Virus record (IMG/VR): IMGVR_UViG_3300013005_000001
Coordinates: 62,001 to 126,000 of that record
Strand: one strand, 5' to 3'
DNA length: 64,000 nt
In this document: positions 9,518-24,472 of the stretch, in pieces
Numbering within the stretch: position 1 is the stretch's first letter
Layout of the letters: every line of letters begins with the position of its first letter
Made by a program: the position numbers and the translations under genes
Notes under the pieces: generated by a model
Told to the model about the DNA's origin: nothing
The model's input: the letters and a program-made list of their open reading frames with translations, nothing else
Databases searched by the model: none

Positions 9518-10129
9518 CTATGTCTCTTCCTGTACATAACAATAGTAAGGGGGACCAGTGTGAGGATCAAATTTTGCAGAAACGGCAATAGCTTTAAGAC
9601 ACAGGCTTTTAGCTTGAGGGATGTTAGGAATGCCCTTTTTAGGAAACAGTATAGACATAGCCCCCAAAGCATAAGAAGCGCCTGTACCGAGCGCATAGAG
9701 GCCACTCACGTCAGATGTCCAGGAGTAATCACCATCTACAACATAGATGGAGCCATTTATTGAACAAATCACCGTAGACCCTTGCTCAGCTATATGGCTT
9801 GATTCATCTCTTTCTGGTGCAGCATAACCTTGAACTTCAAATGTAGCTCTTAGAGATGGTATGAACTTACTAGTAAAAAACTGGTCCAACTTAGAATCTG
9901 TTATGCCCGGTGGTGGTATTGGTGGTTGAAAAACATGATGCAGGATATTTATAGCCCTAACATCTCCAGCAGCACCTAAAAGATATCTACCATTAATAGC
10001 AACTTTAGAAGAATTTTTACCTAAAGTAGTTATTTGAGAAGCGAAACCGCCATCGTCCATAGAGGATATTCTAGAATCTGCACAAATGATACTGAAACCG
10101 TCACCTTGAACTCCAATTATTGTAGTCAT
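9518..10129 (-). CDS. proteasome beta-subunit/HslV-like Ntn threonine protease
   Basis: N-terminal (M)TTIIG nucleophile, ADSR, SSKV, GAAGDV, ALGTG, DPHTG. Confidence 0.85.
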   Translation of the reverse strand: MTTIIGVQGDGFSIICADSRISSMDDGGFASQITTLGKNSSKVAINGRYLLGAAGDVRAINILHHVFQPPIPPPGITDSKLDQFFTSKFIPSLRATFEVQGYAAPERDESSHIAEQGSTVICSINGSIYVVDGDYSWTSDVSGLYALGTGASYALGAMSILFPKKGIPNIPQAKSLCLKAIAVSAKFDPHTGPPYYCYVQEET

Positions 10130-11123: not shown

Positions 11124-11504
11124 TTATTTATTTTTCAATAACAACTTAACATAAAGGGTTCTTCTTTCAATATTAGAAAGAAACTTTACGGCTGTCATTC
11201 TCCAGTTGTTTTGTTTATTAACATAATCTAAAACTTCAGATTCTGAATATTGTGAATTGTTTTTTCTTAGATTGTTTTTGTGCATTTCAACTTTAGTTTT
11301 TTGGCACGATAATTGAAGTTCAATTTCTCTTCTAACCAATTGAAGGCTGTAGTGCCAAAGTTCAAGGTGAGAGTGAAGATAAGATTTAACTTCATCAGAA
11401 GTTTCAGGAGATTTAATGTCGCTGGCAACGACCTCTTGAAACTTGGACATCTCTTTGTCTGATATAGAATCTATAGTTCTATCATTCAGGTATATGAGCT
11501 CCAT
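11124..11504 (-). CDS. hypothetical helical protein
   Basis: ORF track. Confidence 0.6.
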   Translation of the reverse strand: MELIYLNDRTIDSISDKEMSKFQEVVASDIKSPETSDEVKSYLHSHLELWHYSLQLVRREIELQLSCQKTKVEMHKNNLRKNNSQYSESEVLDYVNKQNNWRMTAVKFLSNIERRTLYVKLLLKNK

Positions 11505-12240
11505 TTTTGTTGCCTTTCTTATATATAAATTGGTACACTTGTAAGATATCTTCCTTAAAGGAAGCTTGAGCAGATTCTCCAGATTTTAAAACATAATTTA
11601 GAGAATACAATGGGTAAATTGGCCAACTACCTAGCCAATTAAGTTTTTGTTTATAATCTTTCATTTTGACATCAGTGCCAAAAAGATTAGATAAAACAGT
11701 ATTTCCTATTGGACATATAATTTTAGGATTCATAATATGAATCTCATTATGAAGATATGGCAAACAGTTGTCTATATACTTTTGATCTACTTCTCTAGTA
11801 GGGCATCTTAACAGATATGTTAAACAAGCTTTATCGGAAGAAAAGCCTACTTCTTTTAAAGAAGATATAAAGAAATCAGAAGAAGCCTGATCTAAATAAG
11901 AAGTTTCAAAAATAAATAAAACGTCAGGGTTATTAACATTCCATTTTGGTAGAACTGGAGTAGAAGAGAATTGACACTTCCTACAATTGTGAGTAACCGT
12001 ATGCAGGTCTGTAATCTTTAAAGAATTTTTTAAAGAATTAGAAGAAACTCTTGCCTCTTTGATAATGTCAGCAACATCTGCATTTGGCAATTTTTTATCA
12101 ATTGCCGAGAATATATTAGAAACTATATCTGTCTCCATAAAGCCGAGTTGACCATAAGATCTTTCGACTGATGGAGATTCAGATAAAGCTTCGTTTATAA
12201 TTTCTTCTACTAAGGAAGCGTCAAATGAATTAGAACTCAT
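11482..12240 (-). CDS. family-4 uracil-DNA glycosylase-like protein with degenerate catalytic motifs
   Basis: CRKC, LRCP, CLPYL..EI...PKII.PIG; start reassigned to the ATG at 12240. Confidence 0.75.
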   Translation of the reverse strand: MSSNSFDASLVEEIINEALSESPSVERSYGQLGFMETDIVSNIFSAIDKKLPNADVADIIKEARVSSNSLKNSLKITDLHTVTHNCRKCQFSSTPVLPKWNVNNPDVLFIFETSYLDQASSDFFISSLKEVGFSSDKACLTYLLRCPTREVDQKYIDNCLPYLHNEIHIMNPKIICPIGNTVLSNLFGTDVKMKDYKQKLNWLGSWPIYPLYSLNYVLKSGESAQASFKEDILQVYQFIYKKGNKNGAHIPE

Positions 12241-12682
12241 CCGGAACAGAGTTAGCAGAACCACCCTGTTTAGCTTGACTGCTTGTAGCGGTTGCAGTGT
12301 CAGACTTCTGGAAAGAAGAACCAACATAAGTTAAAGCTTCTGCAACAATAACAATCTTTGAACGAGCTGAACCTTCTTGCTGCCAACGCTCTTGAACTAA
12401 GCGTCCAACAAGCTGAACTTGTGAACCCTTTTTCATTTTGCCTTCGCTAAGTTGTTTAGAAACAAATGAAGCATTCTTAGTTGCAAAATCTGTTCCATCT
12501 TTAAGATAGTATGTAACATCAAAGTATCCTGAGGTTACGCCTGCACCTTTTTCGCTGCCTGCAAAATCAACGGCAATTCTGAACTTAGCGATATTGCCAT
12601 TAGCAATTACTTCAGGGTCAGACACAATGCCTGCGGTTAATATTACGTTGTTACGTGGATCTATCATTTCTATTGTCTCCAA
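12230..12682 (-). CDS. ssb: single-stranded DNA-binding protein
   Basis: OB-fold pattern FRIAVD...YFDV...KGSQVQLVGRL.QERW; acidic PDEF tail. Confidence 0.85.
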   Translation of the reverse strand: METIEMIDPRNNVILTAGIVSDPEVIANGNIAKFRIAVDFAGSEKGAGVTSGYFDVTYYLKDGTDFATKNASFVSKQLSEGKMKKGSQVQLVGRLVQERWQQEGSARSKIVIVAEALTYVGSSFQKSDTATATSSQAKQGGSANSVPDEF

Positions 12683-12931
12683 TTATTCTTTGTTTAATGT
12701 ATCTTTAAATGTATTAGATATTTGATCTAAAAATCCAGTAGAAATCTTAACAGCTTCTACTGAACCATATTCTACCATAAGGTAGTTCAAAAGATTAAGA
12801 TATAAATTATATATTCCCATCTTAAGATCTGTAACCACATCAGTGGTAGTGCCTTCGGGAATATCCTCAAGGAGTTTAAACCCTTCGGCATATTCTTGTT
12901 CTTGCTGGTCTTTATTATCTTCTGTTGACAT
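12683..12931 (-). CDS. hypothetical acidic protein
   Basis: ORF track. Confidence 0.6.
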   Translation of the reverse strand: MSTEDNKDQQEQEYAEGFKLLEDIPEGTTTDVVTDLKMGIYNLYLNLLNYLMVEYGSVEAVKISTGFLDQISNTFKDTLNKE

Positions 12932-13229
12932 TAGTAGTCACCCTATTCGATAAAGCTTCGTCAATTATCTGACCAAGATATTTAGTATCTTTGTAACCTT
13001 TGTCATACAAAACAGATATAATTGGCTTTGGATCAACGTGATTATAAGTTACCAGTTGAAGATTTAAAACATCGTTTATAGTATAAATTCTATAATTATT
13101 TAAATCTCTTCTAGGATTGGGATACTTCTTGTTTTTTTCTCGGTTAGCAATAGTCAATGTGGAAACATTGAGAATTTTAGCTACTTCAGATCTATTAAAA
13201 GAAGGCTGAGATGATTTGTTTTTACTCAT
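12915..13229 (-). CDS. MerR-type helix-turn-helix DNA-binding protein
   Basis: SEVAKILNVSTLTI..RE...Y..PRRD.NNYRIYT..DV. Confidence 0.85.
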   Translation of the reverse strand: MSKNKSSQPSFNRSEVAKILNVSTLTIANREKNKKYPNPRRDLNNYRIYTINDVLNLQLVTYNHVDPKPIISVLYDKGYKDTKYLGQIIDEALSNRVTTNVNRR

Positions 13230-13284
13230 TTAAATTACCTTTTCAAGTTTAGATTATATATAATAGCAAAAAGGTATATAAAAG

Positions 13285-14523
13285 TCAAGACGTAACAAGA
13301 GAATTTTGAAGAATATTAGAAAACATTCTTTTGCATTGAACATAAGAATTTGGTTTTACATTTATTCTATTGGTTTTTAAAAACTTAACAGAAGCTTCTA
13401 AGGCTTTTAGTAGAGTTCGGTCTTCTAAAGAAAGACGCTTAGAAACAAAGGTTAAATAAGCTTGTGATTCGTGAATTTCATGAACATAACTACAGTTATC
13501 TGGGCAATAGTCATTGTGATCTTCGTCTTCGGTATGGTCTTCATGAATTACAATATCAAAGTTATTGCAAAAATCATTAATTAAATGTTCTCTAACATTC
13601 ATTAAATGTTGGTAATAAAAATCTGTATCAGTAAAAGGATTCCAAGTTAATGAAGAAACTTCAGAAAGAGGAATTTCTTCCCAACATTTAAAAAAGGGAA
13701 CATGCCATTGAATAGGAAGATTAGAAGGAAGGTTTTGCAAGGGATGATTTTGCAACCATGTTAAATTTGCTTTAGTTTCTGGTTTTAAATATTTTTCGAA
13801 TTGTTCATACTTGTTAGTATGCAAGAAGAAAGATATACCCTCGGTAATGTCAAAGTTAAAACCACTGTTCCAAATCCAATCGTAAGCAGAAGCCATAACT
13901 CCAGAAAGATCTTTAGGATATTTTTCAATATCTTCCATACTACTAAAGAAAGGTCTGCACAATGTGCCGTTAGAATAAAAGTTATACAATGGTGGAGAAT
14001 ATATAGTTTGATCTAATGAAGACAAAGAATTAGATGCAAAAAACATTTTAACAGAAACTAGTCTCATATCTTCTGGATTGTACATAGCAATATATACCTG
14101 CCAAGGAATAGGTAGGTAGTATTCAGATGTGCCAGTTTGAGTACTTATTTGATCTCTGTAATCGTTGTATGCTGAAACAACTTTATAAGTTGGAGGGCGT
14201 TCAAACAATATAATTCCAGGAGACAAATGTCTTACACCGGGAAATAAAAGAGATTCATCTTCATCAACAGAACGTGAAGCAGTAGCTAAATTAAGTTGTT
14301 CTATTGCATTTTCAGCAAAAGATATATTTTGAAATTCAGTATCAATAATAGGAGAAGTGGTTATTTTTTTAGAAGAAATTCCTGATTCATTAGATACTTT
14401 TAATAAGTAATCACAAACAGCATAAGAAGCGTATCGATCAGGAAAAGCTAAAATATTATAATTAAGCTCAATGTAAGAAGAAGAATAATCTTCATTAAAT
14501 ATAAAATCAGCAGGAGTTAACAT
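13285..14523 (-). CDS. prokaryotic E2 family D-like protein (paralog 3)
   Basis: LPIPWQVYI...KMFF...YSPPLYNFYSNGTLC with putative catalytic Cys. Confidence 0.7.
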   Translation of the reverse strand: MLTPADFIFNEDYSSSYIELNYNILAFPDRYASYAVCDYLLKVSNESGISSKKITTSPIIDTEFQNISFAENAIEQLNLATASRSVDEDESLLFPGVRHLSPGIILFERPPTYKVVSAYNDYRDQISTQTGTSEYYLPIPWQVYIAMYNPEDMRLVSVKMFFASNSLSSLDQTIYSPPLYNFYSNGTLCRPFFSSMEDIEKYPKDLSGVMASAYDWIWNSGFNFDITEGISFFLHTNKYEQFEKYLKPETKANLTWLQNHPLQNLPSNLPIQWHVPFFKCWEEIPLSEVSSLTWNPFTDTDFYYQHLMNVREHLINDFCNNFDIVIHEDHTEDEDHNDYCPDNCSYVHEIHESQAYLTFVSKRLSLEDRTLLKALEASVKFLKTNRINVKPNSYVQCKRMFSNILQNSLVTS

Positions 14524-14526
14524 AAT

Positions 14527-15708
14527 TTAAACAATCTCCGATTGTTGGATATAGGAAGCAACTTCATCATGTTGAAATTCACTAAAGAAATCTTTATTAG
14601 GATCTTCATAATTAAGAAGTACAGACTTATATATAGAAGAAATAATATATGGATTAGAAATATAATTAGCAATAGAAGAAGGTTGATAATTTTTAACTAC
14701 TACTCTATAATTTGTTTCTAAAGAACAAGAAGGATAATGAGAATACACTGCAGATAAAACTTTTGCTATTTTAGCCCAAGGAGTTACTGCATTTGAATAA
14801 GTTTGAGGTATTAAGGAAGAAGAAGAAGAATTAGAATTAGACTTTTTTAAATGGTGTTTTAAAGTTGGATAATGAGAAGTGTTTTGTTTAGTATAAGTAA
14901 TATAACCAATATGTTCTTCTAAAGAAGTATTGGACAAAAGAAACAATAAGCTTTTAAAATACTTTGCTGTGTTGTATCTATAGCCCATATTAGCAAGAAT
15001 AGCAGCATTTTTTTTAGAAGAAGCAGATATTCTATCAATTATAGGAGCAAAGTATTCTTGATTAAACATATGAGGAGATAAATCACAATTCCATCCACCA
15101 AAATAAGAATTAAAAATATGATTATAAACGTCGGTAATAGAAGAACCGTTTTGAATAAGTTGAGTAGCTATAAGAGAATCTTGACCCATGCAAATATTTC
15201 CACCACTAGAATTTGGAAGGTAGCAAGGAACCAACACATCATCAAGAGACTGAAGAGGCTTATCATTAAAATATAAATGAAAACCAAAAGTGCTGCTAAA
15301 TGAATGAGATTGATAATTGGTAGATATAACAGAAACTGTCCATGGAATCCAAATTTTCACAGATTGTAAAAACTTAGGAGAAATTCTAGGACGATAAGAA
15401 GTTGAGGTAGAAAAGTCTACTTCTATTTCAAATGGAGGACGTTCTATGACGTGCATTTTTCCATCTGGAGATGAGTACCTAACAGCTAGGGGAAGCAAGG
15501 AATAATCTGTAGTAGAAGTAGTTTCATAATGTTGATTTATAAGTTTGTAAGTATCTAAAAAGTTAACGTGATAGTTAATCCAAAGATCGTTTTCAACTAC
15601 TCTAGGAGTTGCTTGGTGAGTAAGATTAAAAATATTTTCAGGGATATATAATGAATAATTATAGTCGTAAAAATCAATAGAGTTCATGGCATTATTCCTT
15701 AGAAACAA
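14527..15708 (-). CDS. prokaryotic E2 family D-like protein (paralog 2)
   Basis: IWIPWTV...LYF...LVPCYLPNSSGGNICMG. Confidence 0.7.
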   Translation of the reverse strand: MFLRNNAMNSIDFYDYNYSLYIPENIFNLTHQATPRVVENDLWINYHVNFLDTYKLINQHYETTSTTDYSLLPLAVRYSSPDGKMHVIERPPFEIEVDFSTSTSYRPRISPKFLQSVKIWIPWTVSVISTNYQSHSFSSTFGFHLYFNDKPLQSLDDVLVPCYLPNSSGGNICMGQDSLIATQLIQNGSSITDVYNHIFNSYFGGWNCDLSPHMFNQEYFAPIIDRISASSKKNAAILANMGYRYNTAKYFKSLLFLLSNTSLEEHIGYITYTKQNTSHYPTLKHHLKKSNSNSSSSSLIPQTYSNAVTPWAKIAKVLSAVYSHYPSCSLETNYRVVVKNYQPSSIANYISNPYIISSIYKSVLLNYEDPNKDFFSEFQHDEVASYIQQSEIV

Positions 15709-16303
15709 GAGTCTTTAAATAAGAGTTTGTTTCTTTCTGAACAGGAATAAACATAGCATCTTGCGCAATTTCTTCTTCGGTAAATTGTATGGAAAGATCA
15801 ATCAAAAACCTGTTGAAGAGAGCATTAGCTTCTATGTTTAAGTTATCGTTTTCAATTTGAATTTGAGAATATTTAAGTTCAGAATAAACATTTAAATTAT
15901 TATCGTAGATTTTATAATAATAAGTTCCATCATAAGAACGAAATCTAGAAAGATAATAATCAGTATCTACATCTACAGCATTTCTTACTTTGCGAATAAC
16001 AGAAAAGTCTGGTTTGTAGAGAGGGCAGTTGTTTTGCTCCATTGGATAAACGCAAGATAAAGGACGTGAATCATCATTATTTTTACGAGAAGGGACTGAG
16101 CAAGAAAATATACCAGGGTTGTTAGCATAAGCGTAAGAAGTGGCTGGATTGATATTAGAAGGTGAAGTGTAATGAGAACAAGAAGTTAAAAGAGTTTTAG
16201 AAATCTCATTGGCAAATTCGTAGTCGTTGCTTTTGGGATCTTTTATACTTTTTAAAAGAAGATCTATTGCTGATGTTGTAGTTGTCATATTAATTATCTC
16301 CAA
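15692..16303 (-). CDS. hypothetical protein (Cys-containing)
   Basis: ORF track. Confidence 0.6.
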   Translation of the reverse strand: MEIINMTTTTSAIDLLLKSIKDPKSNDYEFANEISKTLLTSCSHYTSPSNINPATSYAYANNPGIFSCSVPSRKNNDDSRPLSCVYPMEQNNCPLYKPDFSVIRKVRNAVDVDTDYYLSRFRSYDGTYYYKIYDNNLNVYSELKYSQIQIENDNLNIEANALFNRFLIDLSIQFTEEEIAQDAMFIPVQKETNSYLKTLVSKE

Positions 16304-16938
16304 GTCATTTGAGAAACTTGATAATTCTCTGTTTTAAGTCTTTGAATTTCTTCAAGAAGAGAATTTATATATATATCTTTTTCAGATAAAAGATTTGAAA
16401 GGTACTGATTATCAAGTTTAGTTAGATTAAAAGAATCAATAAAAGAAGATATAGAAGAATGAAAAGAATCAGAATTATTAAAAGAATGAACAACAAAAGG
16501 TTGGTCTAATTTATGTGTATTCAAAAGAACAACAGAGCCAGATCCTTGGCCAACTATTTTGATATAGTTGTTAGCAGTTAACTCTGCAATTATAGTGTTG
16601 TAATCACTAGGCAGAAATGAGTTAAAAGCTAATGTTTTAAATAATTTCTTTGATCCAATGAAAGCATAAGAGATATGCTGAGTGTTAAAAAGATCATTAG
16701 CAAAAGCGCGTGCAATAACTGTTTGACTTAGTGTCAATTCAGAAGTTAATTGAGCATACCGTTCTACGCTTATTTCAGAACTTTTAGGCAAAGTCTTAAG
16801 ATAAGAATAATTCTTGTTAAGAAGATGATAAGCAATAAAAGTATTTACTGGATACAAATAATCATCAATAGAATCAAGAATATCATCTAGATGTTCATTA
16901 GCAAATCCAGTAGAAGGCATTTGGTATATAGGTAACAT
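16294..16938 (-). CDS. hypothetical protein with C-terminal coiled coil
   Basis: LLSEKDIYINSLLEEIQRLKTEN heptads. Confidence 0.6.
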   Translation of the reverse strand: MLPIYQMPSTGFANEHLDDILDSIDDYLYPVNTFIAYHLLNKNYSYLKTLPKSSEISVERYAQLTSELTLSQTVIARAFANDLFNTQHISYAFIGSKKLFKTLAFNSFLPSDYNTIIAELTANNYIKIVGQGSGSVVLLNTHKLDQPFVVHSFNNSDSFHSSISSFIDSFNLTKLDNQYLSNLLSEKDIYINSLLEEIQRLKTENYQVSQMTWR

Positions 16939-17216
16939 TAAGTCTCCGTAAGTATAGATTCAAAAGATAAGGTATTATTTTGTAATGAATCAAGAAGTGG
17001 CAAAGATGACAAATGCAACGAATGTATTTCGTCATGCACTTGTTTTGCAATTGGATATATTTTGTGTAAAAAATAAAAATTGTTTAATATATTAAAGTTT
17101 TCAGATTCTACAAATAAAACAGAAACGTTATTGATCGGTTCCGTCAGATAACTTTTCGTCAGCCAGGCTCTCAATGGCTGAGGCAACTCCTGGACTTTCT
17201 GCAGCCAATAGACCAC
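16938..17216 (-). CDS. hypothetical protein, start uncertain
   Basis: Fills the gap in the operon; no clear RBS. Confidence 0.3.
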   Translation of the reverse strand: MVYWLQKVQELPQPLRAWLTKSYLTEPINNVSVLFVESENFNILNNFYFLHKIYPIAKQVHDEIHSLHLSSLPLLDSLQNNTLSFESILTET

Positions 17217-17517
17217 CGGCTCCTTCTTTCATGGCTTCAAGCATTTGTTTTCTGCTTTGAGCTATAGTGTCCATAAATATTTTTTGAGATTCAGGAGAAG
17301 CAAATTTAATTTGGGCTATAAGGCCTTCCATATTAACTGCTTGCTCACCAAAACCAAGAATTAAAGTAGCAATCTGCTTTTCTAAGTTCTCGATAGACTC
17401 ATCAAATTCTTTAAATCTTTCATCTATTTTAGCAGACATAGATATAATAAGTTGCTGAGTTTGTTCTCTAAGCAAATCTATATCGTTTATTCCTTCAAAT
17501 AATGAATCATCTGACAT
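17128..17517 (-). CDS. hypothetical coiled-coil protein
   Basis: ORF track, translational coupling. Confidence 0.65.
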   Translation of the reverse strand: MSDDSLFEGINDIDLLREQTQQLIISMSAKIDERFKEFDESIENLEKQIATLILGFGEQAVNMEGLIAQIKFASPESQKIFMDTIAQSRKQMLEAMKEGAGGLLAAESPGVASAIESLADEKLSDGTDQ

Positions 17518-18134
17518 TACGCATCATACCATTCTGTGTTGTTGGTAACGTGAGAAACCAAAGAAAGATCTAGTAAATAAGAAATACTTACAACATCTTG
17601 ACGAGTTACTTTAATAGAGTCAACAGATAAAGGTGATTTCATATCAGGTATGAATGCACCACTGTCAGACTTGCGAGCTTTAAAATGACCGGCTTTCCAG
17701 ATGAATGCAGAAGTATCTACATTGTCACCTGATTGCCAATACTGGCATTTAAAGATTCTACTAATTGATTGACCAGCAGCAGTCATTGTTCCACCGTAAG
17801 AAACATATGCTTCAGGTGTAGCAAGGCCAAGTCGCTCATTGGCAGGAAAGTTAAGAGCAGCAGTTCCATTAGTTATTGCTTTAAGATAGGCTGCAAAGTC
17901 AATGGCATCAACAAAACAATTAGTGTTACTTTCAAGTTTTCCAGAAGCATTGGTCTTGCCAATGTCAATGGAGAATTTCATACCTTGAAACCAAGGTCGA
18001 ATAGAAACAAAACCACTTTGAGATTTAGATTTAAACCACTTTTTATAAAGTGTGTTAGTGTATTTTGGTTTATCATCTTGGTTATCAGAATCTAGTGATT
18101 CTAAAAACTCTTCTACATTTTCTTCAATTGACAT
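17517..18134 (-). CDS. hypothetical beta-rich protein directly downstream of the AAA ATPase
   Basis: GAGG RBS, 205 aa. Confidence 0.7.
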   Translation of the reverse strand: MSIEENVEEFLESLDSDNQDDKPKYTNTLYKKWFKSKSQSGFVSIRPWFQGMKFSIDIGKTNASGKLESNTNCFVDAIDFAAYLKAITNGTAALNFPANERLGLATPEAYVSYGGTMTAAGQSISRIFKCQYWQSGDNVDTSAFIWKAGHFKARKSDSGAFIPDMKSPLSVDSIKVTRQDVVSISYLLDLSLVSHVTNNTEWYDA

Positions 18135-18156: not shown

Positions 18157-19755
18157 TTAAACTTTCAAGTCCCATGAAGGGGCTTGAGAAGATTTTTGTT
18201 TACCAAGTATATCATCTATATCATTGTACTGGAAGCTAGAAGCCCAGTCCCAGTTTTCATAAGCATAGCGATATAAGTCTTTAATCATTTCGCGTTCTTT
18301 ATTCCAAAGAATATTGCGCATAAATGGAGCAGCTTTTACTACGTCAGCAGTATTTAGCATGCGGTGTTCAGCAGAAACAACATTAAATTTTGTTTCTTTA
18401 ACAAGTGATTTAATTTCTGCACCAGTAAAATACTTAGTTGCATGAGCTATAGCAGAATAATCATACGTATCTTCAGGAAGATAAATCTTAATAATTTCAA
18501 TTCGTTCTTCAAATGATGGCAAGCCAACAAAGAAGATCTTATCGAATCGTTCTGCACGAAGCATTTCTGGCTTAAGATGATTAAGCTGGTTAGCAGCACA
18601 CATTAAGAATACGTCATTAGGAAGTTCTTGAAGACCAGTAAGAAATTCGCCATGAACACGATCGGTAGTGCCACCGTCTACTTGAGATGAGCTTTGACCA
18701 CCAGACATGTCTCGACCGAACTCGTCAATCCAAACACAAAGAGGAGCCATGACTTTAATCTGTTGAAAGACTGTACGCATGTTTTGTTCTGATTGACCAA
18801 TGAAGGAATTCATTACTTGACTTACACCAGTTCGAGCAAGATCAAGACCAAGTGCACTAGCAGTTGCTTCACAAATAGCAGATTTACCAGTGCCCGGAAT
18901 ACCAACAGTTAGCATGCGACGAATAGGCTGAATGCCAAACTTCTGAGCTTCTTGAGGATTATTCCAAAAATAAAGATTGCGCATAATAACATCTTTAATA
19001 TTATCAAGGCCACCAATTTGATCAAAAGTAATCTTAGGTTTGATTATTTCAAGAATTCCATTTTTCTTAACATTAGCCATTTTAGCTTCGTAAATATAAG
19101 AAGAGCTAATTGTCCCATGCTCAAGAACTGACATAAGACAGAGGTTGATGAACTTAGATTCTGTAAGGCCAAGTCCAGCATTAGAAATTTCTTTAGCCTT
19201 AGCAGCATCTAACACTTCGCCATTAGTTGAAGTGTGTATGTGATTAAGAATTTCGTTTAGTTCTTGAAGAGTAGGGTACATATCTTCATGAACATAAAAT
19301 AGATGAGCAATTTCCTCTGGAACATCAGATGCGCTCAACACTATTAGCTGAAGTGGCATCAGAGAAATGTCATCAGATTTAAAAGATTTTCTGTAGTCAG
19401 AATGAAGAGAAGAAACTAAACCTGAGAATTCGTTAGCAAATGCTTTGGGGTCTCCAATTAAATTGTAAATAAAAGACTTAGGAAGATCTTTAACATCAGG
19501 AGAATTAAACATGTAATCAAATGATAATGAAAGATCTGTAGTTGTTTTCACCATGGGTGGAGCGCCTTCTTCAGGCGCAGGTATAGAAACAAGAACTGGT
19601 TTCCACTGAAAGTTTACGTTTTGAGAAAATCCATCTTTTGAAATCGTAAAATAAGTACGCTTATCAAAAGATATAATGTTTTCTTCAAGTCTGTAGGGGT
19701 CGGTTGTTTTAATCCATATGGCAGGAATGCCAAGTTGAATTTGCTGAAAGAGCAT
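18157..19755 (-). CDS. AAA+ ATPase (Ycf46/Cdc48-like, with degenerate N-terminal AAA module)
   Basis: Walker A GIPGTGKS, Walker B CVWIDE, sensor-1 AAN, Arg finger LRAERFD; GGAG RBS before ATG 19755. Confidence 0.9.
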   Translation of the reverse strand: MLFQQIQLGIPAIWIKTTDPYRLEENIISFDKRTYFTISKDGFSQNVNFQWKPVLVSIPAPEEGAPPMVKTTTDLSLSFDYMFNSPDVKDLPKSFIYNLIGDPKAFANEFSGLVSSLHSDYRKSFKSDDISLMPLQLIVLSASDVPEEIAHLFYVHEDMYPTLQELNEILNHIHTSTNGEVLDAAKAKEISNAGLGLTESKFINLCLMSVLEHGTISSSYIYEAKMANVKKNGILEIIKPKITFDQIGGLDNIKDVIMRNLYFWNNPQEAQKFGIQPIRRMLTVGIPGTGKSAICEATASALGLDLARTGVSQVMNSFIGQSEQNMRTVFQQIKVMAPLCVWIDEFGRDMSGGQSSSQVDGGTTDRVHGEFLTGLQELPNDVFLMCAANQLNHLKPEMLRAERFDKIFFVGLPSFEERIEIIKIYLPEDTYDYSAIAHATKYFTGAEIKSLVKETKFNVVSAEHRMLNTADVVKAAPFMRNILWNKEREMIKDLYRYAYENWDWASSFQYNDIDDILGKQKSSQAPSWDLKV

Positions 19756-19795
19756 GTGTACTCCGAATATCAAAATAATAATCTAAGGGCTTTAT

Positions 19796-19885: not shown

Positions 19886-20137
19886 TTAGCCCTTTTCGCC
19901 TGCACGGCGATGGAACTCAACGTTGTCGTTTGGCTGAATGACATAGTTCTCGTCGAGCTTGTCTTTACCCTTGTAAGCAATAGCGTCTGAGCTAATGCCC
20001 CAGAGCTTGCTGAACTGCTCACGAACTTGTCCAACAGTCTTTCCTGAGACTGGTGCTGGCTGATTGTATACACCGTAACGAACGTTGGCTACGCCTTCGC
20101 TTGAGCTGGTGCTTGTTTGGTTGGAATTCATTTCCAT
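19886..20137 (-). CDS. ubiquitin-like (beta-grasp) modifier protein
   Basis: 83 aa, GKTVGQVR...AY.G...DENYVIQPND.VEF, C-terminal RRAGEKG, adjacent to E1. Confidence 0.85.
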   Translation of the reverse strand: MEMNSNQTSTSSSEGVANVRYGVYNQPAPVSGKTVGQVREQFSKLWGISSDAIAYKGKDKLDENYVIQPNDNVEFHRRAGEKG

Positions 20138-20158: not shown

Positions 20159-20908
20159 TTATAGGTAAGCGGGTTGCTGTTGATTAACCATACGATTGTA
20201 TGGCTGGGACATGCCAAGACCTAAATCAAAGTAGATCTCTGACTGTTCTGGATTTTGTTCGGAAACAATAGTATATTGAATACGACCAAGAATCATTGCA
20301 GCAACAGCCATGTTGGTGGCAAGTATTTGTGTACCACCTTCTACTTCGGCTCGTTCTTGACAAGACATTTCACCTGGATTGCGATCAGGTGGATTTTGGT
20401 ATTCTGGGTGTGTTTCTACCGGATGAGCAGTAACGTCTACGCCATCGCGACGACGATAATGATAGATGCTACCAAAAAGGTTATCATCATTTCCACCAGT
20501 AAAAACATCTACGTTGTTAAGCTTTGAAGCTGCGTCAAATAAAATTTTACGAGCAGCAAAGTTGTCAACAACAGCAAGAACAATATCGCCTTCAGTAATT
20601 AACTGAGTAGCTCTGATCTTGCTAGATTCTTCATCTGTTTCAGGATGTTCATCTGAAACAACCCACTTAGGAATAGGTATAACAAGAGTCTGATTAAACT
20701 GCTTAGTTAGCTCAAGAGCTTTAACTGAAGCCTTGTTTCCTACTTGAGTAAATGATTGACGCTCTAAGTTTCTTTGCTCATAACTGTCACCATCAACAAT
20801 TATTAAAGCAGATCCAGGATATTTCCATTCAAGAAGTCTTACGACTCCTTCTGCTAACCAGGTGCCAATGCCACCGGCACCAACTAGAACTACTCTTTTG
20901 GGGTCCAT
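20159..20908 (-). CDS. ThiF/E1-like Ubl-activating enzyme
   Basis: VGAGGIG, VDGD..E.RNL.RQ, VDNFAAR, PGEMSC putative catalytic Cys. Confidence 0.9.
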   Translation of the reverse strand: MDPKRVVLVGAGGIGTWLAEGVVRLLEWKYPGSALIIVDGDSYEQRNLERQSFTQVGNKASVKALELTKQFNQTLVIPIPKWVVSDEHPETDEESSKIRATQLITEGDIVLAVVDNFAARKILFDAASKLNNVDVFTGGNDDNLFGSIYHYRRRDGVDVTAHPVETHPEYQNPPDRNPGEMSCQERAEVEGGTQILATNMAVAAMILGRIQYTIVSEQNPEQSEIYFDLGLGMSQPYNRMVNQQQPAYL

Positions 20909-20918
20909 AAATTATTCC

Positions 20919-22571
20919 TTAATCGTAATAAGCCAAGCTATTAGTATGCTCATAAGCAACATAATCTTGACATTGAGTAATAGGGTTTTCAATTTTTCTT
21001 TTACTTATAGCAAAATCAAGAATTGAAGTTAAATAAGGTTTGCAATTGCGAGAATAATAAAATTCACAATCAACGCAACTTGACTGATTATCATACACGT
21101 TGTATGGATGAGTGTGATCAAATTCAATTACATCATCATAATATACAGTCTTCTCACAGGTGCATTGTTCAATTAAAGATAAAGGAATGTCACAGCAAAC
21201 TGTTCTAGTCTGATCAAATCCTTCATAGAAATAATCATCAAGAACTTCTACAGTTGTTCCTTCGTTACTAGAAAGTAATGAAGTATGCAAAGAACTGTCA
21301 TCATCGTTATAATCAACTTCTTTAATTCGCATAAGCAAATCTTGATCTTTGCCATCTTTAGTCCAAAGGTAATAAGTTACATTAGGATCTAAATTTCTGT
21401 CAGTTAAATACTTTTTAGCGTTATCGATTATCTCAGCATAAGAATCTGATATAAGAGCAAAGCACAAATCGCAAGTGTCACAATAGAAATTCTTTGCGTA
21501 ATAAGCAAGTACTTCAGTTTGACATGATGGGCATTCAGATCCAGCAGAATCTACTTCACCTATAACGAGATATGGTTCATCGTCTTTTGGATCTGGATAC
21601 TCTTGAAGTCGAGGATCTCCGTTACGAATACCAGGATGAGTAGAGGCCTGCGGAAGACTCTGTGCCTGCGTTGTAGCCTGCGTTGTAGACGCCTGCGCCA
21701 CCCGAGTAACCGAACCCCCCGCTATAGGGGGGAGTGCTTTTTTTACTTTAGAAGTCCATTCTACTACTTGAGGATCGGGTTCTTTAAGAAAAATATAATC
21801 TTCAAATACATCTTCTGGCTTAAGGGTATAAGTATGACCGGCCATTTGCATTTCAATATGATATTGAGTTGCGCCATTATTGACAGATTTTTGCCATCCA
21901 TAAGTAATATGGATACCATCAAAATCAGCTTGGTCTGCATGATCTGTGCCAGATGCATATGCAGCCATATCGGGATGGCTATGAACAGAACCAACAATTA
22001 AAACATCTTCTGGTTTTTGATCTACGATACTGTCCGCATCGTACTTACAGTGAACAGAAGTGTTTACTTGGTCTGGAACAAGAACGCCCCAGCCTTGAGA
22101 AGTGCCTTCATACTGAGGATCAAATGTCAAAAGAACAATTGACTCAGTGCCGTGCTGAGCATGAACCAATCTAAAGAACTCGTCTAGCTTGTCAATAATA
22201 ACACGAGGAATGGCAGGAAGACTGTATTCAGCTGTTTCACGAGTAACGTCAAAGTCAAAGAGGTCTTCGTCAACTATTTCAGAAACAGTTCTTCCAACAA
22301 AGTTGTTAACAACCTTAACAATCTTAGTAGAAAGATCAGTTACGTAAGAAACATTCTTAGTTGTAATGCCCTTATCGTAAACGTTTGTTTCAACTTTGCG
22401 GTCAGTAGCAACATTGCAAATTAGATAATAAATATTGAAACCAAGAAATTCAATTTCTTCTTCAATGTTATCTCTGTTTGCCATAAAGCATGGGACTCCG
22501 GATTTAGTCCAGAAGTAATTTAAGTCTTCTAACTTAACATCCATATAAGTAATATTATCTATTTGGTCCAT
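20919..22571 (-). CDS. JAB/MPN+ (JAMM) isopeptidase with C-terminal Cys-rich zinc-binding regions
   Basis: TESIVLL...GSVHSHPDMAAYASGTD (E-HxH-x7-S-x2-D); CPSC/CDTC and further Cys clusters. Confidence 0.88.
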   Translation of the reverse strand: MDQIDNITYMDVKLEDLNYFWTKSGVPCFMANRDNIEEEIEFLGFNIYYLICNVATDRKVETNVYDKGITTKNVSYVTDLSTKIVKVVNNFVGRTVSEIVDEDLFDFDVTRETAEYSLPAIPRVIIDKLDEFFRLVHAQHGTESIVLLTFDPQYEGTSQGWGVLVPDQVNTSVHCKYDADSIVDQKPEDVLIVGSVHSHPDMAAYASGTDHADQADFDGIHITYGWQKSVNNGATQYHIEMQMAGHTYTLKPEDVFEDYIFLKEPDPQVVEWTSKVKKALPPIAGGSVTRVAQASTTQATTQAQSLPQASTHPGIRNGDPRLQEYPDPKDDEPYLVIGEVDSAGSECPSCQTEVLAYYAKNFYCDTCDLCFALISDSYAEIIDNAKKYLTDRNLDPNVTYYLWTKDGKDQDLLMRIKEVDYNDDDSSLHTSLLSSNEGTTVEVLDDYFYEGFDQTRTVCCDIPLSLIEQCTCEKTVYYDDVIEFDHTHPYNVYDNQSSCVDCEFYYSRNCKPYLTSILDFAISKRKIENPITQCQDYVAYEHTNSLAYYD

Positions 22572-22603: not shown

Positions 22604-24472
22604 TTAAAAAGGGTCAGTGAAAGATTGATTGTTAGCTTGTAAAAAGTTTTGATGTTTTTTAATTCCAACAGATTTGGATAAAGTGTGTACAGATTGCTGA
22701 ATAGCAACTTGAACATACTGTTCTTGGAATGGCTGATAATAAGCTACCATTTCTCCTTCAGGAGATTCTGTAACATTACCAAGGCATTCTGCACAACACT
22801 GAGTTACAGTAAGAGAAGTGTCTTCAGGTAAAATAGTGGGAGTACAAGGTCCAAATTGAGAATTATTATTCTTCAACAATCCGCAAGGGCAAGTAAAATG
22901 CTGAGCATTGCATGATTGACAAAGGGTAATAACTTTAGGAGCTAAGATTAAATCAGGTGAAACAACCATGGCCTTAGACTGAGGATAACTTTCTTGCCAA
23001 CCATTAGTTTCAATAGCAACAGCTGCACATACATAACAGTTAGTAGGAGTTAATTCATTATCTGCTATATAACCAGGTTGGCAGTTAGAACATACCACTT
23101 CTTCAGATTCAGGAATGTGTAGAAGTTGTTTAGCTAAAGCAGTTTTTGCATTTTCAGAATTTCCTATAACGCCTATCCAACTTGAGCAAATATGGCATTC
23201 TGCTACAGTATCATGTTGGGTATGATAGTATTCACAGTCTGATTCAGAAAAAACTATATTAGGATCTTCGTTATTATAGTATTTATCAACAGACTCAATA
23301 AAAGAGTAATGATCATTTATGCATGAGTTGCATACATCATTGCCGTAAGCATCGCAAATTGGTTCTTCATCGCTCATATGATGAATGTCTTCACAGCATG
23401 AGCAAACCCAATCGTTTTCATTATCTTCGTCTTGAGAAAATAAGTTTGGCTGGATTAAAACTGCAGAACCGTTTTTCTCTCTGTTAGCAACAGTAAAATC
23501 ATAAGGGTTATCTTTAGCAGTATGAGTATAATTTACTGGAGAAGAAGCAAAAGCTTTTTTAAACATATCAGCAATGTTTAGATCGGTAAAAGATAAATCA
23601 GGACGAGATACAATATTATACATCTTAGGAATGTTAGTATCAGAATAGTATGCTTGGTAGTTACCTAACATAGCCATAGCAAGAGTTAGCTCTTGTCCGT
23701 TGTAATCATGTTGAGCTTGATTATCCATGTCTTTAACTTTAACAGGGATCCAAAGGTTTTCATCTAGAGTCCAATTAAAACCTTCTTCATCAGACTTTTG
23801 CTGCCAAAGCTTTGGATTTGTAATATATTCAGGCTTTCCGTTAGCAGCATAAAAACGAGGACCATCAGTCTCTGACATGTTGGCATCATTATAAGTCTCT
23901 ACTCCTGAGCAGCGCTCAATGAAACGAGAAACTTTTTCATTAAAAGGAAAAGAAGACCAATCATCTTTATGATACAAGCAAATCCAACCTACGGCATTGC
24001 CTCGATAGCCTTTGCAGTTAATGTTAGGAAGGTTAACGTGATAAAGAACGTTATTAGGAGAAGTGATTGGATATGGAGAATAAAACATTTTAGCACCTAG
24101 AAGGTTGCCGTTTTCAAAGTCTCCAATAACAATGCGATAGGGCTGAGCTACATAGTAAGTTTTAGCGTGTATATCGCCCTCGTGAGAGCCCCAGTTGAGG
24201 TGATACATGCCGGGGGCGTGTTGGGTCACAACTTGGGTATGAGGACCCGCAGAACGGATTGCAAGCACTCCTGTGCCATTCAAGGGAAGTAAGCCTGTAT
24301 CAAAGGATGCAAACTGAGAAAAGTTACTGTAAAAAGATACGATATCTTTATCAGTTACATGGTCTAAGTTAAAAGATTTAACAGAAGACCGGACGGCATA
24401 AGTGCCTTGATCGTTTTTAACGAGAGAGTAGTTATATGAGTCAGTCATTGTATTTTCCATTCGCAATGTCAT
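22604..24472 (-). CDS. prokaryotic E2 family D-like protein (paralog 1) with C-terminal CxxC repeats
   Basis: YVAQPYRIVIG...KMFYSPYP...LYHVNLPNIN...GWICL; roughly ten CxxC-type pairs after residue 350. Confidence 0.75.
   Translation of the reverse strand: MTLRMENTMTDSYNYSLVKNDQGTYAVRSSVKSFNLDHVTDKDIVSFYSNFSQFASFDTGLLPLNGTGVLAIRSAGPHTQVVTQHAPGMYHLNWGSHEGDIHAKTYYVAQPYRIVIGDFENGNLLGAKMFYSPYPITSPNNVLYHVNLPNINCKGYRGNAVGWICLYHKDDWSSFPFNEKVSRFIERCSGVETYNDANMSETDGPRFYAANGKPEYITNPKLWQQKSDEEGFNWTLDENLWIPVKVKDMDNQAQHDYNGQELTLAMAMLGNYQAYYSDTNIPKMYNIVSRPDLSFTDLNIADMFKKAFASSPVNYTHTAKDNPYDFTVANREKNGSAVLIQPNLFSQDEDNENDWVCSCCEDIHHMSDEEPICDAYGNDVCNSCINDHYSFIESVDKYYNNEDPNIVFSESDCEYYHTQHDTVAECHICSSWIGVIGNSENAKTALAKQLLHIPESEEVVCSNCQPGYIADNELTPTNCYVCAAVAIETNGWQESYPQSKAMVVSPDLILAPKVITLCQSCNAQHFTCPCGLLKNNNSQFGPCTPTILPEDTSLTVTQCCAECLGNVTESPEGEMVAYYQPFQEQYVQVAIQQSVHTLSKSVGIKKHQNFLQANNQSFTDPF

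What the first reader, a model, noticed from the sequence alone, without database searches (positions are those of the whole stretch)
13285..15708. Two extra tandem E2 family D-like paralogs (three in total), each with a Cys motif
Seen: all three share P-W/Y-x-hydrophobic, then a hydrophobic strand, then PxxN...GxxC (NGTLC, GNICMG, GWICL) but carry different extensions. Inference: E2 expansion could replace E3 ligases by giving each E2 its own substrate specificity.
Basis: partly seen in the sequence, partly recalled or inferred. Interest (0 to 1): 0.7.

Follow-up and report, generated by a model that had tools for sequence, protein, structure and literature searches.

The report
Three E2-like enzymes in jumbo phage
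A 210-kb lake-water phage carries three very diverged copies of a ubiquitin-conjugating (E2-like) enzyme domain, each with its own add-on domains, beside a single ubiquitin-like protein, one activating enzyme and one deconjugating peptidase, which suggests that a bacterial virus tags several different proteins without any known E3 ligase.

Summary
The two tandem ORFs (412 aa, 13285-14523; 393 aa, 14527-15708, minus strand) and a third ORF (622 aa, 22604-24472) share one homologous core with an invariant Cys (C189, C173, C165) and an invariant Asn 7-15 residues upstream.

- **Paralogy.** Profile-profile comparison links the two tandem genes at 97.7% probability and the 622-aa N-domain to the 412-aa core at 96.8%.
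- **Family.** The 412- and 393-aa cores align to bona fide Prok-E2_D / PRTRC protein B proteins (93% and 66%), Cys on Cys. All three fall below Pfam's threshold.
- **Fold.** AlphaFold models of the two tandem proteins give a UBC-like core. About 30 of the top 50 solved-structure matches for the 393-aa model are E2 enzymes, but Z is only 4-5.5.
- **Copy number.** No other ORF in the 210-kb genome matches. It has one ThiF-type E1, one JAB, one Ubl ending in Gly, and no RING, HECT, U-box or canonical UBC.
- **Conservation.** The layout recurs in 39 related uncultured phage contigs. Cores are conserved and flanks diverge fast.

These are a new phage variant of the PRTRC-type E2 family. "Each E2 supplies its own substrate specificity" is plausible but untested.

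The parts
13285..14523 (-). 412-aa E2-like protein: N-terminal beta-sheet plus helix domain (residues 1-88), UBC-like core (about residues 89-293, nt 13645-14259), helical C-terminal extension
   Evidence: ORF. 118 homologues, all metagenomic or viral. AF2 model has pLDDT 83, pTM 0.72. hhalign to the Prok-E2_D reference: 93.4%, E 2.6e-7. AFDB matches: PRTRC system protein B (E 1.6e-8) and a UBC core domain protein (E 2.7e-4). Atlas match to a Prok-E2_D-bearing cluster: TM 0.64, 208 aa aligned, rmsd 3.4 A.
13957..13959 (-). Codon of Cys189, the predicted thioester-forming Cys of the 412-aa protein. Asn181 lies 8 residues upstream.
   Evidence: Invariant in 82 sequences. Aligned to the invariant Cys of PRTRC protein B.
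14527..15708 (-). 393-aa E2-like protein (likely start Met8 at 15687): N-terminal beta domain, UBC-like core (about residues 67-272, nt 14893-15510), C-terminal helical/beta extension
   Evidence: ORF. 25 homologues. AF2 model has pLDDT 78. About 30 of the top 50 matches among 48,161 PDB representatives are E2/UBC enzymes, Z 3.5-5.5, about 125 aa aligned. hhalign to the 412-aa family 97.7% and to the Prok-E2_D reference 66%. Atlas match to a Prok-E2_D-bearing cluster: TM 0.53.
15190..15192 (-). Codon of Cys173, the predicted active-site Cys of the 393-aa protein. Asn166 lies 7 residues upstream, and the C-x-G pattern matches PRTRC protein B.
   Evidence: Invariant in 26 sequences. Aligned to the reference Cys.
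22604..24472 (-). 622-aa protein: very conserved N-terminal E2-like domain (residues 1-305, nt 23558-24472) and a C-terminal half rich in CxxC pairs (residues 357-563, nt 22784-23404). Sits directly upstream of the JAB and E1 genes.
   Evidence: 464 homologues and 205 representatives at 50% identity clustering. hhalign of the diverse N-domain profile to the 412-aa core: 96.8%, E 2.4e-10; to the Prok-E2_D reference: 46.6%, E 2e-4. Nearest ESM Atlas feature clusters carry PF14460.
23978..23980 (-). Codon of Cys165 (GWICL) of the 622-aa protein. Asn150 lies 15 residues upstream, with an insert between them.
   Evidence: 100% conserved in 145 diverse family members. Aligned to Cys189 of the 412-aa protein.
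20919..22571 (-). JAB/JAMM metallopeptidase (550 aa; HSHPD...D motif) with a Cys-rich C-terminal half; the predicted Ubl-processing and deconjugating enzyme
   Evidence: Prok-JAB E 2.7e-6. Best NCBIfam hit is PRTRC_A. It is the only Prok-JAB match in the genome.
20159..20908 (-). Minimal ThiF/MoeB-type E1 (249 aa) with a GxGxxG motif and an invariant Cys183
   Evidence: ThiF E 1.5e-13. Best NCBIfam hit is PRTRC_ThiF, E 1.1e-10, nearly full length. Invariant residues. It is the only ThiF match in the genome.
19886..20137 (-). 83-aa ubiquitin-like (ThiS/MoaD-type beta-grasp) protein ending ...RRAGEKG
   Evidence: The C-terminal Gly is invariant. It is the last residue in 18 of 20 orthologues, and two carry two extra residues. 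Nearest ESM Atlas clusters carry ThiS. The tail resembles that of PRTRC protein C, AAGAKGA.
18157..19773 (-). AAA+ ATPase of the PAN/Cdc48/FtsH kind, next to the Ubl gene; a possible unfoldase for tagged proteins (inferred)
   Evidence: AAA E 1e-22. Proteasome-activating nucleotidase and CDC48 at about 1e-30. IetA E 3.5e-26.
9518..10129 (-). HslV/proteasome-beta-like Ntn-hydrolase candidate (starts MTTIIG); any link to the system is inferred only
   Evidence: Weak Proteasome and HslV hits. Syntenic in related loci.

Best explanation
Proposed mechanism. The two tandem genes and the 622-aa gene encode three anciently diverged paralogues of a UBC-fold, PRTRC-B / Prok-E2_D-like Ubl-carrier enzyme. 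They serve the phage's own ubiquitin-like conjugation pathway.
1. The 249-aa ThiF-type E1 adenylates the C-terminal Gly83 of the 83-aa Ubl, probably with a thioester on E1 Cys183.
2. The Ubl passes to the invariant Cys of an E2-like protein (C189, C173 or C165). The invariant Asn upstream plays the role of the Asn in the canonical HPN motif.
3. The E2-like protein transfers the Ubl to a target lysine.
4. The genome has one E1, one Ubl, one JAB and no recognisable E3. Each E2 core carries different, fast-evolving flanking domains: beta plus helical extensions in the tandem pair, a multi-CxxC zinc module in the 622-aa protein. These flanks most likely choose the targets, so each protein would act as an E2/E3 hybrid.
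5. The JAB peptidase trims Ubl precursors and reverses conjugation.

Shown: homology, the aligned invariant Cys and Asn, the UBC-like fold for two of the three proteins, copy numbers, and conservation across a phage clade.

Inferred: thioester chemistry, use of this particular Ubl and E1, division of targets among the three, and any link to the neighbouring AAA+ ATPase and HslV-like protein.
For: Homology among the three:
- hhalign 97.7% and 96.8%, with the Cys aligned.

Homology to bona fide Prok-E2_D / PRTRC protein B:
- 93.4% and 66%, Cys and Asn on the family's invariant Cys and Asn.
- PF14460 hits in 37 of 82 and 5 of 26 family members. PRTRC_B hits in 4 of 82.

Fold:
- AFDB matches to PRTRC protein B and a UBC core protein.
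- E2 enzymes fill the top solved-structure matches of the 393-aa model, and several appear for the 412-aa model.
- The best named Atlas match of both models is a Prok-E2_D cluster.

Partners:
- A single ThiF whose best hit is PRTRC_ThiF, and a single JAB whose best hit is PRTRC_A.
- A Ubl with an invariant terminal Gly and ThiS-like features.

No E3 and no other E2:
- No RING, HECT, U-box or UQ_con in the genome.
- No fourth paralogue among 155 ORFs.

Constraint:
- Cores are 60-81% identical across orthologues, against 15-49% for the flanks.
- The gene order 622-aa gene, JAB, E1, Ubl, AAA, intervening genes, 393-aa gene, 412-aa gene holds in 39 viral loci. This includes a 591-aa diverged orthologue of the 393-aa gene.

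Presence in nature:
- Short contigs, 99-100% identical (at most one mismatch), over both tandem genes in four lake metatranscriptome libraries.
Against: - No window protein reaches Pfam's gathering score for Prok-E2_D, and HMMER alone finds no cross-family hits.
- Foldseek against the PDB gave nothing significant, and the VIA-align Z scores of 4-5.5 lie in the range the tool itself calls common.
- The conserved His after the Cys, described for the PRTRC-type E2 (PMC1779556), is absent.
- The tandem pair lies five genes and about 4 kb from the Ubl gene, among DNA-metabolism genes (SSB, UDG, a possible Whirly-like protein).
- All 39 loci belong to one phage clade with generally conserved gene order, so synteny is weak evidence of functional linkage.
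- The E1 + Ubl + 412-aa complex prediction gave no answer.
- No PRTRC-type system has been characterised biochemically in the literature I could search.
- The RNA-library contigs could be carried-over DNA.
Confidence: 0.6

Rival explanations
1. The tandem pair works as one unit, a heteromer of two E2-like subunits comparable to Ubc13-Mms2, joined through their N-terminal beta/helix domains. On this reading the phage has two activities rather than three.
For: The two genes are adjacent, or overlap by a few bases, in every locus where the region is covered. Both models have a similar N-terminal three- to four-strand sheet plus helix. For the 412-aa model this domain gives COMM-domain-like matches, a known oligomerisation module: 6bp6 with probability 0.93-0.96 and 9q6a with Z 4.6.
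Against: Both keep the invariant Cys and Asn, unlike catalytically dead UEV partners. The COMM-like matches are weak.
Confidence: 0.2
2. The tandem proteins are Cys-dependent enzymes or adaptors that have left the Ubl pathway. They would act on DNA-replication or repair proteins encoded around them, while only the 622-aa protein next to JAB and E1 serves as the pathway's E2.
For: The pair is separated from the Ubl, E1 and JAB genes by the AAA+ gene and four to five small genes. It is followed by MerR-like, SSB and UDG genes. p205 has a Whirly/PurA-like lead. The gene order E2, JAB, E1 for the 622-aa gene mirrors single-E2 plasmid systems.
Against: The 412-aa protein, not the 622-aa one, is the closest to bona fide PRTRC protein B. 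Plasmid PRTRC-like systems also sit among replication genes, so that context does not argue against Ubl function. No alternative chemistry is known for this fold with a conserved Asn and Cys pair.
Confidence: 0.12
3. The proteins are non-catalytic UBC-fold scaffolds (pseudo-E2 / UEV-like). The conserved Cys would be structural or metal-binding.
For: Scores sit below family thresholds and the class-specific His is lost. The proteins are two to four times larger than typical E2s.
Against: The Cys and the Asn at the canonical spacing are invariant across very diverged orthologues and across all three paralogues, and they align with the catalytic pair of the reference family. The core is the most conserved part of each protein.
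Confidence: 0.08

Closest known systems
PRTRC system protein B (TIGR03737) / Pfam Prok-E2_D (PF14460); operon class 6d of Iyer, Burroughs and Aravind 2006 (PMC1779556)
   Same: - Same core by profile-profile alignment, with Cys and Asn aligned at the same Asn-to-Cys spacing (8 residues in the 412-aa protein; PN...C-x-G in the 393-aa protein).
- The His of the classical HPN motif is absent.
- An N-terminal domain precedes the E2 core.
- The partners are a small ThiF-type E1, a JAB peptidase and a small Ubl with a ...GxKG tail.
   Different: - Found in a phage rather than a plasmid or ICE.
- Three paralogues rather than one.
- 393-622 aa rather than about 240 aa, with long C-terminal extensions.
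- Below the Pfam and NCBIfam cut-offs.
- The 'absolutely conserved' His after the Cys is missing.
- No ParB, PRTRC protein E or PRTRC protein F partners were found.
- Sits next to a PAN/Cdc48-like AAA+ ATPase.
Eukaryotic UBC-fold E2 enzymes (for example UBE2S, UbcH10, Pex4p, UbcH5, Ubc9)
   Same: The predicted fold is a four-strand meander, then a loop carrying Asn and Cys, then helices. About 125 residues superpose. The local motif N-x(6-7)-C resembles HPN-x(7)-C (established knowledge of UBC enzymes).
   Different: There is no sequence match to UQ_con and no HPN His. Z scores are only 4-5.5. Large flanking domains are present, and the E1 has no UFD-type E2-recruiting domain.
Hybrid E2/E3 enzymes such as UBE2O and BIRC6 (functional analogy only)
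   Same: An E2 core is embedded in a larger protein whose other domains would bind substrates, so no separate E3 is needed. UBE2O appears among the weak structural matches.
   Different: There is no homology outside the UBC core, and the analogy is untested here.
Bacterial antiphage Ubl systems: Bil (BilA-D), type II CBASS Cap2/Cap3, Bub/6E (PMC11601596, PMC10557695)
   Same: A prokaryotic-world E1, E2, JAB and Ubl toolkit that conjugates a Ubl to proteins in phage-host conflict.
   Different: Those systems are host defences with one E2, or an E2-E1 fusion. PADLOC models matched only the E1 (E1-E2 models, E 3e-6), not the three E2-like proteins. Here the virus carries the system.

Membership tests
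Pfam Prok-E2_D (PF14460) / PRTRC system protein B | Score at or above the curated family threshold (25 bits for PF14460) | tested here: not met
   The 412-aa protein scores 13.4 bits (E 0.063). The 393-aa and 622-aa proteins have no hit. Across family members, 37 of 82 and 5 of 26 hit at E <= 0.1, with a best E of 3e-5; 0 of 49 members of the 622-aa family hit.
Pfam Prok-E2_D (PF14460) / PRTRC system protein B | Homology of the core to bona fide members by profile-profile comparison | tested here: met
   Against a nine-member reference alignment: 412-aa family 93.4%, E 2.6e-7; 393-aa family 66%, E 5.6e-5. The 622-aa N-domain reaches 46.6%, E 2e-4 directly and 96.8% through the 412-aa family.
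Pfam Prok-E2_D (PF14460) / PRTRC system protein B | Invariant catalytic Cys, preceded by a conserved Asn, in the loop after the beta-meander | tested here: met
   C189/N181, C173/N166 and C165/N150 are invariant. The first two pairs align to the reference's invariant N159/C167. C165 aligns only to C189 of the 412-aa family, and the direct 622-to-reference alignment (46.6%) does not place C165 on the reference Cys. In both models the Cys lies between the last core strand and the first following helix.
Pfam Prok-E2_D (PF14460) / PRTRC system protein B | Lacks the His of the classical HPN motif (Iyer et al. 2006) | tested here: met
   The 412-aa protein has L-Y-N and the 393-aa protein has L-P-N. 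The 622-aa protein has YHVNLPN, but its His145 is not conserved at 90% or more in the diverse set.
Pfam Prok-E2_D (PF14460) / PRTRC system protein B | [quoted passage not shown] 2006, Table 1 row 6d) | tested here: not met
   No invariant His follows the Cys in any of the three families. The aligned position in the 412-aa protein is Phe224. Conserved instead are W/N/D residues: WNSGFNxD, GGWNxD, and NDxNMSETDG. In my nine-member reference the His is present in 7 of 9.
Pfam Prok-E2_D (PF14460) / PRTRC system protein B | Genomic association with a ThiF-type E1, a JAB peptidase and a small Ubl | tested here: met
   One of each lies within 10 kb on the same strand. Their best NCBIfam hits are PRTRC_ThiF and PRTRC_A.
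PRTRC system (ParB-related, ThiF-related cassette) as a whole | Presence of the ParB-family protein and PRTRC proteins E and F beside A, B, C and ThiF | tested here: inconclusive
   Neither Pfam nor NCBIfam gave a ParB, PRTRC_E or PRTRC_F hit for the cluster ORFs I scanned, but not every ORF was scanned. Cupriavidus pMOL28 shows the full set.
UBC/E2 fold superfamily | Predicted UBC fold | tested here: met
   393-aa model: about 30 of the top 50 PDB representatives are E2s, Z up to 5.5, about 125 aa aligned. 412-aa model: Ubc8 Z 4.9, UBC9, Pex4p and UbcH7, plus an AFDB UBC core protein at E 2.7e-4. The scores are modest, and the 622-aa protein was not modelled.
Canonical eukaryote-type UBC (Pfam UQ_con, PF00179) | Sequence match to UQ_con and an HPN motif | tested here: not met
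   There is no UQ_con match in the genome at E <= 1, and no HPN motif.
Any E2 | E1-dependent Ubl thioester on the Cys and transfer to a substrate | not testable with these tools
   This needs biochemistry. The complex prediction gave no answer.

The most novel reading that the evidence does not exclude
A clade of freshwater jumbo phages encodes a complete, E3-less ubiquitin-like tagging network. One Ubl, one E1 and one JAB serve three substrate-specific E2/E3-hybrid enzymes. The network is coupled to a PAN/Cdc48-like AAA+ unfoldase and an HslV-like peptidase, making a virus-borne analogue of the ubiquitin-proteasome system. It would mark host proteins (for example defence proteins) or phage proteins for remodelling or destruction.
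Probability: 0.2. Interest if true: 0.9.

Novelty: new variant of a known kind. Interest (0 to 1): 0.62.

Why it matters
Known prokaryotic Ubl-conjugation systems (Bil, CBASS Cap2, Bub, PRTRC) carry one E2 or an E2-E1 fusion, and the characterised ones are host defences. This case differs in several ways:

- The virus owns the pathway and has triplicated the E2 step, giving each copy different accessory domains. That is the same route by which eukaryotes diversified ubiquitin signalling.
- The PRTRC / Prok-E2_D family has no solved structure that a sequence search could find and no biochemistry that I could find. These phage proteins, with hundreds of natural variants, would therefore be good material for defining the family's mechanism.
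- If the three E2s have separate targets, they would show what a phage needs to tag during infection. They would also give a minimal model for E3-independent substrate choice.

Tried and rejected
- **Foldseek against the PDB.** No match at E <= 0.001 for either model. E2s appear only at E 0.2-0.7 for the 393-aa model.
- **HMMER with family profiles over all ORFs of the genome.** Each profile finds only its own gene, so cross-family similarity is visible only profile to profile.
- **Untrimmed or low-diversity profiles of the 622-aa family.** Only 19%, 2% and 0.4% probability against the other families. This was resolved by adding diverse members from the exhaustive search.
- **Sequence search of the PDB.** Profiles of the 412-aa, 393-aa and 622-aa N-domain families and of the reference found nothing relevant.
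- **PHROGs and PADLOC.** No match for the three E2-like proteins.
- **GenBank phages.** No match by DNA or by tblastn.
- **Species-representative bacterial and archaeal genomes.** No relative of the 622-aa N-domain.
- **Complex prediction of E1 + Ubl + 412-aa protein.** Score 0.00, 'no answer', so it is evidence neither way.
- **Two hypothetical genes after ThiF on a Butyrivibrio plasmid, tested as a possible parallel tandem E2 pair.** They are not E2-like. The single E2_D-like gene there lies upstream of the JAB gene.
- **Literature searches for a phage-encoded E1/E2/JAB/Ubl system.** Nothing found, including in the 224-genome jumbo-phage survey PMC7824862.
Full report
**What is there**

The finding's coordinates match two complete, adjacent minus-strand ORFs: 13285-14523 (412 aa) and 14527-15708 (393 aa). 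Orthologues of the second are 379-386 aa and Met8 is nearly invariant, so its real start is probably the ATG at 15687. The three quoted Cys motifs are real: NGTLC at 13957-13971, GNICMG at 15184-15201, and GWICL at 23975-23989. The last lies in a 622-aa ORF (22604-24472) directly upstream of the JAB and E1 genes.

The window is bases 62001-126000 of a 210,302-bp viral record with direct terminal repeats, judged complete. It comes from lake water and recurs in lake metagenomes from 2017 to 2024.

**Are the three related, beyond chance?**

- The tandem pair shows 32% identity over 108 residues ending at the Cys (E 7e-4). Their family alignments are A1 (82 sequences) and A2 (26 sequences). These align at 97.7% probability, E 1.6e-12, over 191 columns, with C189 on C173.
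- The 622-aa protein was at first only marginally linked: 19% to A1 and 2% to A2. An exhaustive profile search with its N-terminal 305 residues found 205 representatives. A 145-sequence profile built from them aligns to the 412-aa core at 96.8%, E 2.4e-10, over 160 columns, with C165 on C189.
- As a genome-wide control, I compared all 155 ORFs of at least 130 aa with the four core profiles. Only these three reach 20% probability. Unrelated plasmid proteins score 0.1-1%.
- The Cys and an upstream Asn are invariant in every family.

**Is it E2 family D?**

- Pfam gives the 412-aa protein a sub-threshold Prok-E2_D hit (13.4 bits, cut-off 25) and nothing for the other two.
- PF14460 is nevertheless the only recurrent family among orthologues: 37 of 82 for A1 (best E 3e-5), 5 of 26 for A2, and 0 of 49 for the 622-aa family. 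PRTRC_B hits 4 of 82.
- For a direct test I collected nine annotated 'PRTRC system protein B' or 'prokaryotic E2 ligase family D' proteins from plasmids. One of them scores 79 bits on PF14460. Their alignment (A4) has an invariant Asn and, eight residues later, an invariant Cys followed by x-G.
- A1 aligns to A4 at 93.4%, E 2.6e-7, with N181 and C189 on those two columns. A2 aligns at 66%, E 5.6e-5, Cys on Cys. The diverse 622-aa N-domain profile reaches 46.6%, E 2e-4.
- A protein-language-model search places the 622-aa N-domain nearest to viral clusters that carry PF14460: score 0.95, 214 of 256 shared features.

**Fold**

- The AlphaFold2 models are usable: 412 aa with pLDDT 83 and pTM 0.72; 393 aa with pLDDT 78. 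In both, a beta-meander is followed by a loop holding the Asn and Cys and then by helices.
- Foldseek against the PDB found nothing significant.
- The alignment-independent search of 48,161 PDB representatives gave about 30 E2 enzymes among the top 50 for the 393-aa model. Examples are Pex4p Z 5.5, UBE2S 5.3 and UbcH10 5.2, with about 125 residues aligned over model residues 67-272. It gave several E2s for the 412-aa model: Ubc8 4.9, UBC9 4.5, Pex4p and UbcH7 4.4.
- These Z values are in the range the tool calls common. The argument rests on the enrichment of E2s and the coverage of the domain, not on the scores.
- AlphaFold DB clusters gave PRTRC system protein B (E 1.6e-8; a second member with rmsd 2.9 A over 119 residues) and a 'UBC core domain' protein (E 2.7e-4). 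The 393-aa model repeats the pattern more weakly.
- In the ESM Atlas the best named structural match of both models is the same Prok-E2_D-bearing cluster, with TM 0.64 and 0.53 by the hit.

**Differences from the known family**

- The proteins are 393-622 aa, against about 240 aa for PRTRC protein B.
- They miss the family thresholds.
- They lack the His that Iyer et al. 2006 call absolutely conserved after the Cys in this operon class (PMC1779556). The aligned residue in the 412-aa protein is Phe224, and no His is invariant after the Cys in any of the three families.
- I therefore treat them as new, diverged subfamilies related to Prok-E2_D rather than as members in the strict sense.

**Context**

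On the same strand lie:
- a JAB peptidase (Prok-JAB E 2.7e-6);
- a 249-aa ThiF-type E1 (E 1.5e-13) with an invariant Cys183;
- an 83-aa protein that ends in an invariant Gly in 18 of 20 orthologues, while two carry two extra residues.

The small protein's nearest feature clusters are ThiS-family, and its tail RRAGEKG resembles that of PRTRC protein C, AAGAKGA. The best NCBIfam hits of the E1 and the JAB are PRTRC_ThiF (E 1.1e-10, nearly full length) and PRTRC_A.

The genome has exactly one ThiF and one Prok-JAB match. It has no RING, HECT, U-box or canonical UBC match at E <= 1.

Next to the Ubl gene is an AAA+ ATPase whose best hits are proteasome-activating nucleotidase and CDC48 (about 1e-30). 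About 3 kb beyond the tandem pair is a weak HslV/proteasome-beta-like ORF that starts MTTIIG.

**Conservation**

Thirty-nine related viral loci, from contigs of up to about 268 kb, show the same gene order. It runs: 622-aa gene, JAB, E1, Ubl, AAA, p205, p129, (p214, p203), 393-aa gene, 412-aa gene, MerR-like, SSB, then the HslV-like gene.

The one apparent exception (L021/L022) has a 591-aa diverged orthologue of the 393-aa gene, at 99.4% to the A2 core. All these loci belong to one phage clade, so synteny alone is weak evidence for functional coupling.

Within each family the E2 core is the best conserved part: mean identity to the window protein is 0.60, 0.69 and 0.81. The flanks reach only 0.15-0.49, or 0.21-0.59 in the 622-aa family.

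No homologue was found in 50,697 GenBank phage records or in species-representative prokaryote genomes.

Four lake metatranscriptome libraries contain short contigs, 99-100% identical (at most one mismatch), over both tandem genes. That is compatible with transcription but does not prove it.

**Mechanism**

The best-supported reading is a phage-borne, PRTRC-like Ubl conjugation pathway in which three diverged E2-like enzymes share one E1, one Ubl and one JAB. The invariant Cys would carry the Ubl thioester, and the invariant Asn would play the role of the HPN Asn.

With no recognisable E3 and different, fast-evolving extensions on each core, the extensions most likely select targets. These are beta/helical modules in the tandem pair and eight conserved CxxC pairs in the 622-aa protein. 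Each protein would then work like an E2/E3 hybrid.

The one complex prediction I could run (E1 + Ubl + 412-aa protein) returned 'no answer'.

Rival readings are:
- the tandem pair acts as one heteromeric unit (weak COMM-domain-like N-terminal matches);
- the pair has left the Ubl pathway and works with the surrounding DNA-metabolism genes;
- the proteins are non-catalytic pseudo-E2s, which the invariant Asn and Cys make unlikely.

**Novelty**

Automatic annotation already places Prok-E2_D domains in phage proteins, and the PRTRC-type operon was described in 2006. I did not find any of the following in the searchable literature, including a 224-genome jumbo-phage survey:
- a virus-encoded full cascade with a triplicated, domain-extended E2 step;
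- its conservation across a large clade of freshwater jumbo phages;
- its position beside a PAN/Cdc48-like ATPase.

I rate it a new variant of a known kind, of good but not exceptional interest. The more ambitious reading, a viral ubiquitin-proteasome-like system, is possible but unsupported beyond gene content.

Noticed in passing
window 18157-19773 (-): The AAA+ ATPase directly downstream of the Ubl gene has best hits to proteasome-activating nucleotidase and CDC48 (about 1e-30). It also matches the antiphage ATPase IetA (3.5e-26).
   Followed up: partly
window 9518-10129 (-): A 203-aa ORF starting MTTIIG gives weak Proteasome, HslV and archaeal beta-subunit hits, which suggests an Ntn-hydrolase with Thr2 as nucleophile. 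It is syntenic in more than 30 related phage loci.
   Followed up: partly
window 32269-33795 (-): A subtilase (Peptidase_S8, E 6e-34). Together with the IetA-like ATPase it recalls the IetA/IetS pair of a defence system. It lies about 12 kb from the ATPase gene (18157-19773).
   Followed up: no
window 22784-23404 (-) and the C-terminal half of 20919-22571 (-): The C-terminal half of the 622-aa protein has eight conserved CxxC pairs and a conserved His. The JAB protein also has a Cys-rich C-terminal half. These are probably zinc ribbons and could be substrate-binding or E3-like modules. They were not modelled.
   Followed up: partly
window 19886-20137 (-); L019:3653-3904, L035:3554-3805: The Ubl ends RRAGEKG with the Gly as last residue in 18 of 20 orthologues. 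Two orthologues carry two extra residues (SL, NI) and would need trimming. Trypsin would leave a single-Gly remnant on targets.
   Followed up: yes
window 17517-18134 (-): p205, conserved right after the AAA+ gene in all loci, has a weak Whirly/PurA-like (ssDNA/RNA-binding) lead from the protein-language-model search, and no Pfam hit.
   Followed up: partly
window 14260-14523 (-) (residues 1-88 of the 412-aa protein): The N-terminal three-strand sheet plus helix of the model gives COMM-domain-like matches: 6bp6 with probability 0.93-0.96, and the bacterial COMMD-like octamer 9q6a with Z 4.6. It may be an oligomerisation module.
   Followed up: no
L042 (Butyrivibrio hungatei plasmid pNP144) 2291-12613: This plasmid has the gene order E2_D-like (220 aa; 96.8% to the reference), JAB-containing 558-aa protein, Rad52, one unknown gene, ThiF, two unknown genes, helicase, pol III delta, SSB. 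It mixes Ubl enzymes with replication genes as the phage does, but has a single E2.
   Followed up: partly
window 12500-17500: Four lake-water metatranscriptome libraries hold short contigs (150-260 nt), 99-100% identical with at most one mismatch, scattered over both E2-like genes and their neighbours. Fourteen lake metagenomes from 2018-2024 hold 83-100% of the 13285-15708 stretch (the two E2-like genes).
   Followed up: partly
window 11482-12327 (-) and 12230-12682 (-): A UDG-superfamily protein with a long N-terminal extension and an SSB lie just downstream of the tandem pair. The listed ORFs overlap by about 100 nt, so one start codon is probably mis-set.
   Followed up: no
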